A stretch of DNA of 64,000 bases, from positions 3,286,001 through 3,350,000 of the forward strand of contig NC_047026.1 in assembly GCF_902652985.1 (NCBI RefSeq). The letters run 5' to 3'. This stretch comes from Pecten maximus (taxonomy: Eukaryota). The translations under genes and the position numbers were made by a program. Under the pieces are notes generated by a model. That model saw only the letters and a program-made list of their open reading frames with translations, was not told where the DNA came from and did not search any database. Each line of letters starts with the position of its first letter. The first letter of the stretch is position 1. Shown here piece by piece: positions 3,331 to 49,135 of this stretch.

Positions 3331-5311
3331 ATGGCTGAAGGAGGAACCCCTCACGATCTTTCTGATAGTCCAAGGGAAGCCCGGCTGTTAGATTGTCCGA
3401 TTTGTCTGGAGCAGCTGCACGAACCAAAGTCACTCCCGTGTCTTCATTCCTTCTGTCAGGGATGTCTGTCCACCTTCATCACCAAAGACCTGTCGGGGAA
3501 GATGGCGTCGGCAACTGCCTTCCCTTGTCCTGTGTGTAGGAAGATGACACAGCCTGTCAACCCGTCGGAGGACAAGGGGAAATGGGCGCAACAATTCCCA
3601 GTCAATGTAATAGTGAGAGATCTGGTAAAGGCCCCGTCACTTGAGCCGATGTACTGTAAGCCTTGCGGGAAGAAAGGGAAACCTGGGATCCCGGCAGCTA
3701 TATGGTGTGAAAAATGCAACGCGTTCTTCTGTGAAACATGTAAAGTCGATTTTCACGATTTGATTCACGAAGAATGTGAAAAAGTAGACATAACAGGGAA
3801 GGAAGGAATTACTCAGCGACACGGAACAGGACAGATCCGATGTGAAAAACACACAAAGAAGATGTGTTATTATTGTGAGGATCATCAGATACTTAGCTGT
3901 AGTAGATGTATCACCATAGACCACAGACGATGTGACGTAGTGACAACGACACAGGAATATTGTGACAAACTGAAGACGGAGTCACGACTGGAGGATCGGA
4001 AAGAATCACTACAGAAGACAAAGGAGGCTATCAAGTTGCTCGTCAAAACATTTGGAGAGAAACTTCAAATCCTCCTGGAAGATCAAAATACCGGATTTGA
4101 CAGTTTAACAGATCTGCGAAAACAGGTCGACCTACGTCTTGACGCCATGCAGAAGGACATCACAGACAAACTGGTATCGTCTTATAAACAAGAGAAGGAA
4201 AATCTGGACTTGTCTATTCAGAAATGTGAACGTCTGATGTCATCCATTGAGAATACAGTAGAAAGCTCCGAGATAGCAGTTCAGAGGAATGATAGCGTAA
4301 ACACAGTCTTGATGTATCAGAGGCCAAGCGGAAATGGAGTCTTACCAGAACCTGATCACGGAAATAAGGAAGTCTTTCGCTTCTGTCAGAATAAAACATG
4401 TCGTCGATCCCAGTCTGGTCAGGTTGGATAAGGATAGTCCACTGTCATTAGGAAGCGTCATTATAGAGGAAAAACCAGAACAGCTCCCAAAAGGAATAAG
4501 TACCATGAGGCCTTTGTGCGAATGTGACGTGAAGGAAGTAGTCAAGTTCAGTATCAAGTGTCCATCAGATGGAGGCAGTTGTTATGCAGCTGGTATTGTT
4601 TACTTACCTGATGATCATATCGTTGTAGTAGATTACAACAATAACAAAATAAAGTTGTTTACAACTTCAGGGAAATGTTTGGATGAGATGAAGGTTCCAG
4701 GAAAACCGTTTGATATGTGTTGTGTAGATGATGACACAGTAGCGGCCGCTATCGTCAATTCAGAAATACACATAATCAAAGTGAACCATGCAAAACTAAC
4801 TTTGTCTTCCAAAATAAAACTTTCTAACGGAGCACACCCACGTGGTATCACTTACTCAAATGAGGCGTTTACTGTGAGTACTCCGACCGATGTGTATAGA
4901 GTCAGTAAGAATGGAGTTCCGAACACAATTGTTTCTCCTCCTAGTCGCTGCTTACACCTTGCGTGCGACCCAAGGACAGGACACATATATGGAAGTCAAT
5001 CGACATCCGTGGCTGGTGATGTAGCTGTATACAGACTGTCAGACGGTAAACTTACAAGCATATCAAAAGTTGGTTTGCTGAAGGACGCGTTTGGTGTAGA
5101 CGTCGACAGGGATGGCAATGTGTACGTGTGTGGGTGGGCGTCCAATAACGTGGTACAGATGTCAGGCGACGGGACAAACGCCAGAGAGCTGCTGACGTCA
5201 TCAGACGGTGTAGACAGACCGATCGCGATATCTGTGTGTGGGAACAAATTCGTGGTTACAAACCAATCATCACAAAATCGTAGTGAAGTGCGAGTGTTTG
5301 AACTTTACTGA
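3331..5311 (+). pseudogene. TRIM (RING-B-box1-B-box2-coiled coil-NHL-like) copy 1, frameshifted
   Basis: C3HC4 RING (CPIC..CLHSFCQGC..CPVC), two B-boxes and a coiled coil in ORF 3331-4431. The propeller is in ORF 4334-5311. There is a 2-bp AG deletion at about 4319-4322 (TATCAGAGGCC versus TATCAGAGAGGCC in paralogues). Confidence 0.9.
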
Positions 5312-47146: not shown

Positions 47147-49135
47147 ATGGCTGAAGGCGGAACCCCTCACGATATTCCCGATTGTCCCGGACCTCCCAGG
47201 GAAGCCCGGCTGTTAGATTGTCCGATTTGTCTGGAGCAGTTGCACGAACCAAAGTCCCTCCCGTGTCTTCATTCCTTCTGTCAGGAGTGTCTGTCCACCT
47301 TTATCACCAAAGACCTGTCGGGGAAGATGGCGTCGGCGACTGCCTTCCCTTGTCCTGTGTGTAGGAAGATGACACAGCCGGTCAACCCGTCTGAGGACAA
47401 GGAGAAATGGGCTCAACAATTCCCAGCCAATGCAATAGTGAAAGATCTGGTAAAGGAAGCGACAATGGAACCGATGTATTGTAAACCTTGCGGAGGGAAA
47501 GGGAATACTGGGATACCGGCAGCGATCTGGTGTAAAATATGCAATGTGTTCTTTTGTGATACATGTAAAGTCGATTTTCATGATTGGATTCACAAAGAAT
47601 GTGAAACAGTAGATGTAACACGGAAGGAAGGATTTGTTCAGCGACAAGTAACAGAACAGATCCGATGTGAAAAGCATACGAAGGAGGTCGATTACTATTG
47701 TGAGGACCATCATATACTTGGCTGTAGTAGATGTATCACCATAGACCACAGACGATGTGACGAAGTGACAACGACACAGGAATACTGTGACAAACTGAAA
47801 ACGGAGTCACGACTGGAGGATCGAAAAGAATTACTACAAAAGACAATGGAGGATATCAAGTTACTCGTCAAAACATTTGGCGAGAAACTTCAAATCCTCC
47901 TAGAAGATCAAAATTCTGGATTTGACAGTTTAACAGATCTGCGAAAACAGGTCGACCTACAACTTGACGCCATGCAAAAGGACATCACAGACAAACTGGT
48001 ATCGTCTTATAAACAAGAAAAGGAAAATCTGGACTTGTCTATACAGAAATGTGAACGTCTGATGTCATCCATTGAGAATACAGTAGAAAGCTCCGAGACA
48101 GCTGTTCAGAGGAATGATAGCGTAAACACAATATTGATGTATCAGAGAGGCCAAGTAGAGATGGAGTCCTACCAGAACCTGATCACGGAAATGAGGAATT
48201 CTTTTGCTTCTGTCAGAATAAAACATGTCATCGATCCCAGTCTGGTCAGGTTGGATACGGATAGTCCACTGTCGTTAGGAAACGTCATTATAGAGAAAAA
48301 CCCAGAACAGCTCCCAAACGAAATAGGAACCACGAAGCCATTGTGCGAATGTGACGTGCAGGAGGTCGGCAAGTTCAGTATCAAGTGTCCATCAGATGGA
48401 CACGATTGTTTTGCAAATGGCATTGTTTACTTACCTGATGATCACATCGTTGTTTCAGATTGGAACAATAAGAAAATAAAGTTGTTTACAGCTTCAGGGA
48501 AATGTTTGGATGAGATGAAGGTTACTGGAAACCCGTATGATATGTGTTGTATAGATGATGACACTGTAGCGGCCGCTATCTACAATTCTGAAATACTCAT
48601 AATCAAAGTGAACCATGCAAAACTAACTTTGTCTTCCAAAATAAAACTTTCTATCGGAGCAGACCCATATGGTATCACTTACTCAAATGAGGCGTTTACT
48701 GTGAGTACTCAGACCGATGTGTATAGAGTCAGTAAGAATGGAGTTCCGAACACAATTGTTTCTTATCCTAATCGCTGCTTACACCTTGCGTGCGACCCAA
48801 GGACAGGACACATATATGGAAGTCAATTGACATCCAAGGATGGTGATGTAGCTGTATACAGACTGTCAGACGGTAAACTTACAAACATATCAAAAGTCGG
48901 TATGCTGAGGACCGCATCTGGTGTGGACGTCGACAGTGACGGCAATGTGTACGTGTGTGGGAATAGGTCTAATAACGTGGTACAGATGTCAAGGGACGGG
49001 ACAAACGTCAGAGAGCTGCTGACGTCATCAGACGGTGTAGACAGACCGAGGGCTATATCTGTGTGTGGGAACAAATTCGTGGTGACCAATGAATCAAAGA
49101 ACAGAAATGAAGTATATGTGTTTGAACTTTACTGA
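47147..49135 (+). CDS. TRIM (RING-B-box1-B-box2-coiled coil-NHL-like) copy 4, 662 aa
   Basis: Intact ORF with the same domain motifs. Confidence 0.93.
   Translation: MAEGGTPHDIPDCPGPPREARLLDCPICLEQLHEPKSLPCLHSFCQECLSTFITKDLSGKMASATAFPCPVCRKMTQPVNPSEDKEKWAQQFPANAIVKDLVKEATMEPMYCKPCGGKGNTGIPAAIWCKICNVFFCDTCKVDFHDWIHKECETVDVTRKEGFVQRQVTEQIRCEKHTKEVDYYCEDHHILGCSRCITIDHRRCDEVTTTQEYCDKLKTESRLEDRKELLQKTMEDIKLLVKTFGEKLQILLEDQNSGFDSLTDLRKQVDLQLDAMQKDITDKLVSSYKQEKENLDLSIQKCERLMSSIENTVESSETAVQRNDSVNTILMYQRGQVEMESYQNLITEMRNSFASVRIKHVIDPSLVRLDTDSPLSLGNVIIEKNPEQLPNEIGTTKPLCECDVQEVGKFSIKCPSDGHDCFANGIVYLPDDHIVVSDWNNKKIKLFTASGKCLDEMKVTGNPYDMCCIDDDTVAAAIYNSEILIIKVNHAKLTLSSKIKLSIGADPYGITYSNEAFTVSTQTDVYRVSKNGVPNTIVSYPNRCLHLACDPRTGHIYGSQLTSKDGDVAVYRLSDGKLTNISKVGMLRTASGVDVDSDGNVYVCGNRSNNVVQMSRDGTNVRELLTSSDGVDRPRAISVCGNKFVVTNESKNRNEVYVFELY

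What the first reader, a model, noticed from the sequence alone, without database searches (positions are those of the whole stretch)
3331..49135. TRIM-NHL cluster with hypervariable propeller top face and invariant RING/coiled coil: candidate diversified innate-immune receptor repertoire
Seen (copies 1/2/3/4): RING and coiled coil are nearly identical, but the same two positions of each blade change radically. Blade 1: C[Y/D/D/F]A and D[Y/Y/C/W]NN. Blade 2: G[K/K/H/N]P[F/I/I/Y]D and AI[V/Y/V/Y]N. Blade 3: A[H/H/G/D]P[R/R/Y/Y]G. Blade 4: C[L/Y/Y/L]H and SQ[S/W/R/L]T. Blade 5: [DAF/DAC/YVF/TAS]GV and CG[WA/RA/WE/NR]S. Blade 6: P[I/R/R/R]A. Established: in NHL propellers the residues just before strand a and just after strand b form the top ligand-binding face, which binds RNA in Brat and LIN-41/TRIM71. 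Inference: diversifying selection on ligand specificity coupled to a constant E3 ligase module, analogous to TRIM5 or finTRIM B30.2 loops.
Basis: partly seen in the sequence, partly recalled or inferred. Interest (0 to 1): 0.78.

Follow-up and report, generated by a model that had tools for sequence, protein, structure and literature searches.

The report
Scallop TRIM-NHL genes, fast-evolving binding face
Four neighbouring king-scallop genes encode ubiquitin-ligase proteins that are nearly constant except at about thirty positions on the ligand-binding face of their C-terminal propeller, which change faster than neutral DNA, as expected of a variable intracellular recognition family whose targets are still unknown.

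Summary
The window (Pecten maximus by the names of identical hits) carries four intronless RING/B-box/coiled-coil/NHL genes. There are also two gene fragments. RING and coiled coil are under strong purifying selection (omega 0.05-0.4), and their synonymous divergence equals that of the NHL domain. Site models favour positive selection in the NHL domain of this clade and of two independent clades in the same genome, and never in the N-terminal half. The selected sites fall two loops per blade. These loops hold the in-blade positions of the RNA-contact residues of zebrafish LIN-41. For those 30 positions omega is 3.8 here. A tree-free ratio, pN at those sites over pS of the domain, is 2.44 (1.68-3.50). 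Paralogues are mosaics, so single-tree tests may be inflated; the pairwise tests still hold. The same positions vary in homologues named from four scallop species. RNA libraries hold the coding region. No 3D model could be made because the tool was off. The immune role is only inferred, and the surface is aromatic-rich, not basic like LIN-41. This scan found the same kind of array on other pieces of this genome. I found no paper describing it.

The parts
3331..5311 (+). Copy 1 (c1): a RING/B-box/coiled-coil/NHL gene broken by a 2-bp deletion at about 4319. It reads as two overlapping ORFs, 3331-4431 and 4334-5311. The NHL part is about 4517-5308.
16420..18408 (+). Copy 2 (c2): intact, 662 aa, no intron within the ORF. 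The NHL domain is about 17617-18405.
37829..39820 (+). Copy 3 (c3): intact, 663 aa, used as the reference for numbering. RING aa 21-97, B-box 1 98-165, B-box 2 166-206, coiled coil 207-345, linker 346-405, NHL propeller 406-663 (about 39026-39817).
47147..49135 (+). Copy 4 (c4): intact, 662 aa. The NHL domain is about 48344-49132.
8798..9250 (+). Gene fragment in three pieces and three reading frames: aa 321-391, 393-454 and 631-655 of c3.
22826..23373 (+). Older fragment of an NHL domain (aa 465-663, 46-83% identity by piece, in three frames).
2661..3215 (.). 26-nt satellite array (21 copies) that ends 116 bp before the ATG of c1.
13785..16278 (.). 26-nt satellite array (94 copies) that ends 142 bp before the ATG of c2.
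43932..47004 (.). 26-nt satellite array (115 copies) that ends 143 bp before the ATG of c4.
30347..30597 (.). Short array of the same 26-nt satellite. Together with 36707-36882 it looks like the array upstream of c3, split by the retroelement remains between them.
36707..36882 (.). Second short piece of the 26-nt satellite, about 950 bp upstream of c3.

Best explanation
This is a tandem cluster of intronless TRIM-type E3 ubiquitin-ligase genes (RING, two B-boxes, coiled coil, six-bladed NHL propeller, no filamin domain). It belongs to a large family found in scallops. The family turns over by duplication, pseudogenisation and exchange of segments between paralogues. Purifying selection keeps the RING and coiled coil, the catalytic and dimerising scaffold. 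Positive, diversifying selection acts on about 25-30 residues. These lie in the loop just before strand a and the loop just after strand b of each blade. Together they ring the central opening on the 'upper' face, the face that LIN-41/TRIM71 uses to grip RNA. Each paralogue therefore presents a different binding surface on the same ligase chassis. The most likely working (inferred) is that the propeller face captures a fast-changing ligand and the RING then ubiquitinates it or signals. The most likely ligands are proteins or nucleic acids of viruses, other intracellular parasites or mobile elements. Shown here: the architecture, the selection pattern and its place in the blade, mosaic evolution and transcription. 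Inferred: the 3D face (by homology only), ligase activity, and the ligand and immune role.
For: Architecture: Pfam finds RING, B-box and NHL. A profile of the NHL domain hits TRIM71, TRIM3, TRIM2, Thin and Brat NHL structures. Family: 69 matching stretches in the genome from 67 scored of 452 first-look candidates, and homologues named from four scallop species. Scaffold constraint: omega is 0-0.43 in RING and 0.05-0.15 in the coiled coil. The coiled coil's dS (0.06-0.27) equals that of the NHL (0.08-0.19) among c1-c4 and L002. Positive selection in the NHL: M1a/M2a LRT is 34.95, 92.03 and 13.94 in three independent clades, against 0.00, 1.93 and 0.35 for the N-terminal half. M7/M8 LRT is 45.25, 102.65 and 16.24. 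Cross-validation: sites picked in the other two clades give omega 3.11 in this clade (p 0.0016), against 0.39 for the rest. Structure-derived class: 12 of the 14 LIN-41 RNA-contact residues listed in Kumari 2018 section 8 could be placed, by letter-verified offset, on the TRIM71 blade alignments. They fall at in-blade positions -4, -3 and -1 before strand a, and +1 and +2 after strand b. The 30 equivalent positions give omega 3.80 (p 2.3e-4) in this clade and 3.36 (p 5.7e-5) in clade B; the rest give 0.35-0.51. Tree-free: pN/pS at these sites exceeds 1 in 10 of 10 close pairs here. pN(sites)/pS(domain) is 2.44 (1.68-3.50), 1.82 (1.49-2.24) and 2.03 (1.40-2.92). Face asymmetry: omega in my 'top' loops is 0.94/1.71/0.80, against 0.32/0.45/0.36 in 'bottom' loops. 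Generality: in 132 of 132 close pairs among 107 scallop homologues, identity at the 30 sites (mean 0.50) is below the rest of the NHL (0.86). Interface-like make-up: W is 20x and Y 4.2x enriched at the variable sites. Transcription: contigs of two RNA libraries lie on 24 and 27 of 30 bins of c3 and on none of the flank-only bins that the DNA runs cover.
Against: No 3D model could be made. The blade and strand map is my own sequence-based assignment, drawn after I had seen the variable columns. The blade-4 loop register is ambiguous. Two LIN-41 contacts (Y658, W660) were not visible in the alignments. Paralogues are mosaics: 398 of 666 informative site pairs in the NHL fail the four-gamete test. 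A single tree is therefore wrong and the LRTs may be inflated. Branch lengths were also fixed to the M0 tree up to a scale. In clade C the a-priori class is not significantly above 1 (omega 1.22, p 0.54; cross-picked sites 1.42, p 0.27). As a broad class the top loops are only about 1 in clades A and C. In clade A the synonymous divergence at the 30 sites is low (8 synonymous differences pooled), which inflates the ratio 6.08. Single pairs are weak on their own (binomial p 0.04-0.42). Nothing here shows an immune role, ligase activity or a ligand. The RNA contigs are short, at 95% identity or more, and cannot be assigned to c3 rather than an allele or close paralogue. At several positions private to the reference copy, all four runs show the family's common letter. 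One of the four copies is broken, and 6 of 12 near-clade loci are disrupted.
Confidence: 0.6

Rival explanations
1. The paralogues are endogenous regulators that have split up host targets. Like LIN-41, Brat or Mei-P26, each would bind its own set of host mRNAs or proteins, for example in development, the germline or neurons. The fast change would reflect neofunctionalisation after duplication, or a role in silencing the host's own mobile elements, and not pathogen recognition.
For: All characterised TRIM-NHL proteins in the papers I read regulate host RNAs through this same face. The selected positions are the LIN-41 RNA-contact equivalents. Kumari 2018 itself argues for 'rapid evolution of the domain' (abstract).
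Against: Selection is recurrent at the same sites in three clades and across homologues named from four scallop species. That looks like a continuing arms race and not a one-off division of labour. The basic residues that hold the RNA backbone in LIN-41 are not conserved. There is high turnover with many pseudogenes.
Confidence: 0.2
2. The family serves a non-immune recognition system with fast-evolving partners, for example gamete or self/non-self compatibility or symbiont management, and acts through an intracellular ligase.
For: Diversifying selection and tandem expansion are also typical of reproductive and allorecognition genes (established knowledge, recalled). Nothing in my data ties the family to infection.
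Against: I saw no signal peptide or membrane segment in the sequences (read by eye; no predictor was run), so an extracellular recognition role is unlikely. The RING/B-box/coiled-coil chassis is that of cytosolic ligases.
Confidence: 0.1
3. Relaxed constraint only. The loops are unimportant surface residues drifting neutrally in a family that is decaying into pseudogenes.
For: One of the four copies is frameshifted and 6 of 12 near-clade loci are disrupted. The broad 'top loop' class has omega about 1 in clades A and C.
Against: Neutral drift gives omega of at most 1. At the 30 a-priori sites omega is 3.8 and 3.4. The tree-free ratio excludes 1 in all three clades. The loops on the opposite face stay constrained (omega 0.32-0.45). 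The rest of the protein is under purifying selection. The make-up of the variable sites is biased to W, Y, H and R and is not random.
Confidence: 0.05
4. Artefact. The signal would come from recombination or gene conversion between paralogues, from misalignment in loops, or from assembly errors.
For: Mosaic structure is strong, and recombination is known to inflate site-model LRTs (recalled).
Against: The pairwise and bootstrap tests use no tree. The close copies align without gaps in the NHL apart from one codon near aa 649-650. The pattern repeats in independently assembled genomes of other scallops.
Confidence: 0.03

Closest known systems
TRIM5alpha/TRIM22 of primates and finTRIM/bloodthirsty-type TRIMs of fishes (RING/B-box/coiled-coil + B30.2/SPRY)
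   Same: They share a constant RBCC ligase chassis, lineage-specific tandem expansion and positive selection focused on loops of the C-terminal recognition domain. A passage of Marin 2012 notes the rapid amplification of SPRY TRIMs in fishes linked to changed selective regimes. The TRIM5 details are recalled.
   Different: Here the recognition domain is an NHL beta-propeller, not B30.2/SPRY. No antiviral activity is known. The host is a mollusc.
LIN-41/TRIM71 (structures 6FPT/6FQ3/6FQL, 7QRX), Brat, Mei-P26 and NHL-2: classical TRIM-NHL RNA regulators
   Same: They share the domain family (profile E 8e-20 to TRIM71 NHL) and the six-bladed propeller whose first strand closes blade 6. The scallop variable positions are the in-blade equivalents of LIN-41's RNA contacts on the upper face.
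   Different: The classical proteins are single-copy and conserved, with a basic pocket. The scallop genes have many copies, no filamin domain (no Pfam hit) and no intron in the ORF. Their equivalent positions are hypervariable, rich in W and Y, and not basic.
TRIM32 / NHL-without-filamin TRIMs, and TRIM56 (NHL-like, antiviral)
   Same: They share RING, B-box, coiled coil and a C-terminal NHL or NHL-like domain without filamin. TRIM56 is reported as a Zika restriction factor that depends on RNA binding (title and abstract in the listing, PMC6623546).
   Different: They are single-copy vertebrate genes with no reported diversifying selection on the propeller face. The scallop proteins carry two B-boxes.
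Human TRIM2/TRIM3/TRIM71 NHL comparison (Chaikuad 2022, PMC9634614)
   Same: That paper finds the top opening to be the putative binding site and the most diverse part among paralogues (passages).
   Different: That diversity lies between ancient paralogues with fixed functions. It is not recurrent positive selection among recent tandem copies.

Membership tests
TRIM-NHL (RBCC + NHL; class VII, subfamily C of Marin 2012) | N-terminal RING finger (C3HC4) | tested here: met
   PF13445 35.5-37 bits and PF00097 33.6-34.5 bits, both above their cut-offs, at aa 25-72 in c3 and c4. The Cys/His ligands are conserved in all 25 aligned P. maximus sequences, read from the alignment.
TRIM-NHL (RBCC + NHL; class VII, subfamily C of Marin 2012) | One or two B-box zinc fingers after the RING | tested here: inconclusive
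   PF00643 at aa 170-203 scores 21.7 and 18.2 bits, below the 24.1 cut-off (E 2e-4 and 3e-3). A second Cys/His-rich box at aa about 108-150 is seen by eye only.
TRIM-NHL (RBCC + NHL; class VII, subfamily C of Marin 2012) | Coiled coil between the B-box and the C-terminal domain | not tested
   No coiled-coil predictor was run. Region 207-345 is assigned from its position and charged, Pro/Gly-poor sequence. Its omega is 0.05-0.15.
TRIM-NHL (RBCC + NHL; class VII, subfamily C of Marin 2012) | C-terminal six-bladed NHL beta-propeller | tested here: met
   PF01436 scores 33.4 bits (c4) and 21.5 bits (c3), above the cut-off of 20. The profile hits TRIM71 8e-20, TRIM3 8e-17, TRIM2 3e-15, Thin 9e-13 and Brat 1.6e-8. 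Six repeats can be aligned blade by blade. The fold itself was not modelled.
TRIM-NHL (RBCC + NHL; class VII, subfamily C of Marin 2012) | Filamin/ABP280 repeat before the NHL domain (TRIM2/3/71 type) | tested here: not met
   There is no filamin hit at E up to 0.01. The 60-aa linker resembles the TRIM32-type arrangement. Filamin is not required for the wider family.
RNA-binding NHL of the LIN-41/Brat type | Conserved basic residues on the upper face that hold the RNA backbone | tested here: not met
   The 30 contact-equivalent positions are hypervariable (mean entropy 3.08 bits against 1.60) and enriched in W, Y and H as well as R. By my count, c3 has about 4 basic and 4 acidic residues there. 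RNA binding itself is not testable here.
Diversified TRIM restriction/recognition factors (TRIM5alpha, finTRIM type) | Positive selection concentrated in the C-terminal recognition domain, with a conserved RBCC | tested here: met
Diversified TRIM restriction/recognition factors (TRIM5alpha, finTRIM type) | B30.2/PRY-SPRY recognition domain | tested here: not met
   There is no SPRY hit; the domain is NHL. So this is not a member of that group, though it may work like one.
Diversified TRIM restriction/recognition factors (TRIM5alpha, finTRIM type) | Lineage-specific tandem expansion with pseudogenes | tested here: met
   Four copies and two fragments lie in 46 kb. Further near-clade loci lie at C12 3.20-3.26 Mb, and clusters lie on C7, C17, C3 and C14. 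Among the 12 near-clade loci, 6 are intact and 6 disrupted.
Diversified TRIM restriction/recognition factors (TRIM5alpha, finTRIM type) | Restriction of, or induction by, a pathogen | not testable with these tools
   Only presence in RNA libraries was shown.

The most novel reading that the evidence does not exclude
Scallops, and perhaps bivalves at large, carry a germline-encoded repertoire of dozens to hundreds of cytosolic TRIM ligases. Their NHL propeller face would act as an antibody-like, W/Y-rich variable paratope, diversified by point selection and reshuffled loop by loop through gene conversion between tandem paralogues. This would be an NHL-based counterpart of TRIM5/finTRIM that restricts viruses such as herpes-like viruses, or retroelements.
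Probability: 0.35. Interest if true: 0.82.

Novelty: new variant of a known kind. Interest (0 to 1): 0.65.

Why it matters
TRIM-NHL proteins are textbook conserved developmental RNA regulators. The fast-evolving, immune-type TRIMs known so far use a B30.2/SPRY domain and are described in vertebrates (recalled; Marin 2012 passage). A large mollusc family in which the NHL propeller's binding face is the target of recurrent positive selection would show two things. The RBCC chassis has been recruited twice, with different sensor domains, for variable recognition. Bivalves, which lack adaptive immunity and suffer viral mass mortalities, would also gain a concrete, testable set of candidate intracellular restriction factors. 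The roughly 30 mapped positions give direct targets for swap experiments and for association with disease resistance in aquaculture stocks.

Tried and rejected
Gene conversion as the sole cause of the 'invariant' N-terminal half is rejected for c1-c4 and L002. Synonymous divergence in the coiled coil (0.06-0.27) equals that in the NHL (0.08-0.19). Conversion does occur elsewhere. L006 shares its 5' half with this cluster (dS 0.1-0.2) but not its linker and NHL (dS about 0.9), and blocks are shared between copies.

I checked whether the flanks are more alike than the coding DNA, prompted by 99% windows. This is rejected: long flank alignments are 88-92% identical, like the genes.

Positive selection in B-box 1 is not supported. 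M2a adds nothing for the N-terminal half in any clade.

I tried to use the laid contigs as allele data. This is rejected as unsafe. The contigs are about 100-200 nt at 95% identity or more, most 'other letters' equal the letter of paralogues, and 33 rows were not shown. I only note that 7 of the 18 variant codons shown in the NHL are among the 30 sites (hypergeometric 0.0016).

Literature: eight searches and three look-ups inside papers found no description of a mollusc TRIM-NHL expansion or of selection on an NHL face. In PMC8382680 and PMC4346834 the term 'TRIM' occurs only as trimAl or trimmed. The library lacks most subscription journals. Supplements were closed and not asked for, so gene-family tables of scallop and oyster genome papers may list this family without my seeing it. 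I did not run a FUBAR-like grid or a GARD-type partition.

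
Full report
WHAT IS THERE. The window is G000:C12:3286001-3350000 of a 918-Mb genome. Proteins identical or nearest to its ORFs are named Pecten maximus by NCBI. Four ORFs without introns, all on the + strand, encode proteins of about 662 aa with RING, B-box and NHL matches. They are c1 3331-5311, c2 16420-18408, c3 37829-39820 and c4 47147-49135.

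Copy 1 has a 2-bp deletion in a CAGAGAGG run near 4319 and reads as two overlapping ORFs. tblastn finds two more fragments, at 8798-9250 and 22826-23373. Each gene is preceded by an array of a 26-nt satellite that ends 116-143 bp before the ATG of c1, c2 and c4. Upstream of c3 the array appears split by retroelement remains, which carry a reverse-transcriptase match and a zinc-knuckle match at 32.2-36.5 kb on the minus strand. Long flank alignments between the units are 88-92% identical, like the genes.

THE FAMILY. A search of the whole genome with c3 gave 69 matching stretches; only 67 of 452 first-look candidates were scored. The near clade (66% identity or more) has 12 loci, on C12 3.20-3.34 Mb, on the unplaced contig C3456 and on C10.
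- Six loci are intact: L001=c3, L002, L003=c2, L004=c4, L006 and L007.
- Six loci are disrupted: L005, L008, L009, L010, L011 and L019=c1.

Two other clades of recent paralogues serve as independent replicates. Clade B holds nine sequences at 76-88% identity, on C17 and unplaced contigs. Clade C holds six at 88-93% plus L025, on C7 and unplaced contigs. The protein database holds 132 homologues at E up to 1e-20. Those listed are named from Pecten maximus, Mizuhopecten yessoensis, Argopecten irradians and Ylistrum balloti, and the best hit outside Pecten is 64% identical.

CHECK OF THE OBSERVATION. Nei-Gojobori estimates by domain among c1-c4 and L002 are as follows.

| Domain | dN | dS | omega |
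|---|---|---|---|
| RING | 0-0.03 | 0.04-0.17 | 0-0.43 |
| Coiled coil | 0.003-0.027 | 0.06-0.27 | 0.05-0.15 |
| NHL | 0.08-0.11 | 0.08-0.19 | 0.49-1.23 |

Synonymous divergence is therefore the same in the constant and the variable halves. The constancy of the N-terminal half is purifying selection, not recent homogenisation. B-box 1 is not constant (omega 0.24-1.08).

SITE MODELS. I wrote a codon-likelihood script. Its M0 likelihoods equal IQ-TREE's GY+F3X4 values to 0.01. Branch lengths were fixed to the M0 tree up to a free scale. The results by clade were:

| Test | Clade A (this cluster) | Clade B | Clade C |
|---|---|---|---|
| NHL (aa 400-663), M1a vs M2a LRT | 34.95 (p 2.6e-8) | 92.03 (p 1e-20) | 13.94 (p 9e-4) |
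| NHL, M2a omega2 / share of sites | 5.4 / 5.5% | 5.4 / 9.4% | 6.2 / 2.6% |
| N-terminal half (aa 1-345), M1a vs M2a LRT | 0.00 | 1.93 | 0.35 |
| NHL, M7 vs M8 LRT | 45.25 | 102.65 | 16.24 |

None of the three N-terminal LRTs is significant. Sites with posterior above 0.5 in clade A are 419, 422, 439, 462, 479, 508, 534, 543, 545, 561 and 606.

WHERE THE SITES LIE. No model could be predicted because the tool was off. I used homology instead. phmmer aligns each of the six blades of human TRIM71 NHL (7qrx_A) to blade 1 of c3.

Section 8 of Kumari et al. 2018 (PMC5908797, read) lists the RNA contacts of zebrafish LIN-41: C563, R564, R581, S582, R611, K628, D629, Y658, W660, R676, R707, F722, R752 and R770. 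With the offset 'zebrafish residue = 7qrx chain index + 545', the expected letter is found at 12 of these 14 positions. Y658 and W660 lie outside the printed alignments.

The 12 placed contacts fall at five in-blade positions: -4, -3 and -1 before the first residue of strand a, and +1 and +2 after the last residue of strand b. By antiparallel topology these two loops lie on the same face. In LIN-41 that face is the 'upper' surface with the RNA-binding cavity. The same paper confirms that the first strand after the linker closes blade 6. Chaikuad et al. 2022 describe the top opening as the putative binding site and as the most diverse part among human TRIM-NHL proteins (passages).

Extending the five positions to all six scallop blades gives 30 positions. 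The anchors are my own and are consistent with the Pizza and TRIM2 alignments for blades 5 and 6. The register of the long blade-4 loop is ambiguous.

TESTS ON THAT A-PRIORI CLASS.

| Clade | omega at the 30 positions | LRT against omega=1 | p | omega at the rest |
|---|---|---|---|---|
| A | 3.80 | 13.55 | 2.3e-4 | 0.35 |
| B | 3.36 | 16.19 | 5.7e-5 | 0.51 |
| C | 1.22 | 0.38 | 0.54 | 0.36 |

Of the 29 model-selected sites, 20 are among the 30 positions out of 264 (Fisher 3.9e-16).

A second, data-driven cross-validation used sites picked (posterior above 0.5) in the other two clades.

| Clade | omega at cross-picked sites (number of sites) | p against omega=1 | omega at the rest |
|---|---|---|---|
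| A | 3.11 (25) | 0.0016 | 0.39 |
| B | 3.02 (14) | 0.0039 | 0.64 |
| C | 1.42 (27) | 0.27 | 0.36 |

With my broader loop classes, omega is 0.94/1.71/0.80 (clades A/B/C) on the 'top' loops. It is 0.32/0.45/0.36 on the 'bottom' loops and 0.35/0.45/0.37 in strands. Only one face is released from constraint.

RECOMBINATION. The paralogues are mosaics. Twenty informative sites in B-box 1 group c2 with c4. Eight in B-box 2 group c1 with c2. A block at aa 531-546 groups c1 with c4, and a block at 648-654 groups c2 with c4. In all, 398 of 666 pairs of informative NHL sites fail the four-gamete test. NHL and N-terminal trees differ, and L006 is a chimera with a breakpoint near aa 345. The single-tree LRTs may therefore be inflated.

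Tree-free tests hold:
- At the 25 cross-picked sites, omega is 1.5-7.3 in 10 of 10 pairs among c1-c4 and L002. Their dS (0.07-0.23) is like the rest.
- At the 30 positions, pN/pS exceeds 1 in 10 of 10 close pairs in clade A, 24 of 36 in B and 14 of 15 in C.
- pN at the 30 sites over pS of the whole NHL is 2.44 (bootstrap 1.68-3.50), 1.82 (1.49-2.24) and 2.03 (1.40-2.92) in A, B and C. For the remaining sites it is 0.48, 0.41 and 0.38.

GENERALITY AND CHEMISTRY. I aligned 107 full-length homologues of 600-720 aa, out of the 120 proteins fetched from the family's four scallop species. Among them, 132 pairs are 80-98% identical in the rest of the NHL. Mean identity is 0.50 at the 30 sites, 0.86 in the rest of the NHL and 0.89 in RING to coiled coil. 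The 30 sites are the less conserved in 132 of 132 pairs. Mean entropy is 3.08 bits at the 30 sites against 1.60 bits elsewhere in the NHL (Mann-Whitney 2.8e-13). Eighteen of the 30 highest-entropy NHL columns are among them. The variable sites are enriched in W (20x), Y (4.2x), H (1.9x) and R (1.8x), and depleted in V, I, L, M and P. This make-up suggests a binding interface (my inference from recalled hot-spot statistics). It differs from the arginine/lysine pocket of LIN-41.

EXPRESSION. Twenty public runs from nine studies hold part of c3. Four are on record as RNA-Seq and hold 36-43% of the sampled words, against at most 56% in DNA runs. I laid four of the 24 listed runs on window 37700-39900. 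The two RNA libraries have contigs on 24 and 27 of 30 bins. They have none in 37700-37847 or 39846-39900, which both DNA runs cover, and they show no joints. This supports transcription of an intronless coding region. However, the contigs are short. At several positions private to the reference copy, all four runs show the letter common to the family. The transcripts may therefore come from alleles or close paralogues.

INTERPRETATION. Shown here: a tandem, birth-and-death TRIM-NHL family, purifying selection on the ligase scaffold, and positive selection on the two top-face loops of each blade in at least two of three clades (all three by the tree-free ratio). Also shown: exchange of segments between copies, and transcription. 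Inferred: the 3D placement, E3 activity and, above all, the ligand and any immune role. The nearest functional analogy is TRIM5alpha/finTRIM. By membership, though, these are TRIM-NHL proteins without filamin, and they fail the B30.2 criterion of that group. They also fail the 'conserved basic RNA pocket' feature of LIN-41/Brat.

LITERATURE AND EARLIER NOTES. Eight searches and three in-paper look-ups found no description of this family or of selection on an NHL face. Supplements were closed and most subscription journals are absent from the library. This scan had already noted and followed up the same kind of array on two other pieces of this genome (s1-788484 and s1-793767). My tests on this window were made independently and agree with them.

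Noticed in passing
window 2661-3215, 13785-16278, 30347-30597, 36707-36882, 43932-47004: A 26-nt satellite (consensus unit given, up to 115 copies) sits directly upstream of each TRIM-NHL gene and ends 116-143 bp before the ATG of c1, c2 and c4. It may be part of the duplication unit and could promote unequal crossing-over or act on the promoter.
   Followed up: partly
window about 32262-36513, minus strand: A run of short ORFs carries a reverse-transcriptase match (PF00078, E 2.8e-20, 33236-33925) and a zinc-knuckle match (35709-36074). These look like decayed retroelement remains, apparently inserted into the satellite array upstream of c3. I only observed them.
   Followed up: partly
window 54006-62357: Nine tRNA-Phe(GAA) genes lie on the + strand within 8.4 kb. 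Between them are 49-nt tandem repeats at 56160-56409 and 58003-58414. Earlier notes of this scan call these hammerhead-ribozyme satellites; I did not test that.
   Followed up: no
L006 (G000:C12:3202041-3203975) compared with the window's copies: L006 is a chimera. Its RING to coiled coil is close to c1-c4 (dS 0.08-0.2), but its linker and NHL are distant (dS about 0.9), with the switch near aa 345. The frameshift of c1 (aa 333) and the breaks of L010 and L011 (aa about 390) lie in or near the same linker region.
   Followed up: partly
window 39083-39098 (codons 419, 422, 424 of c3): Contigs from four runs show several different letters at the same codons. Codon 422 has four alternative bases at two positions, and some of these occur in none of the paralogues I compared. 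This hints at further alleles or copies in other individuals, but it is not resolvable with short contigs.
   Followed up: partly
window 21846-22348: A 97/189-nt tandem repeat (about 5 copies) lies just upstream of the old NHL fragment at 22826-23373.
   Followed up: no
PDB listing: The designed 'Pizza' propellers carry names such as Pizza6-KSH-TSH and Pizza6-TNK-RSH. In the printed alignments these three-letter codes seem to match the residues at in-blade positions -3, -1 and +1. Those are the same positions that vary in the scallop family. This is my reading of the names and alignment and was not checked in a paper.
   Followed up: no
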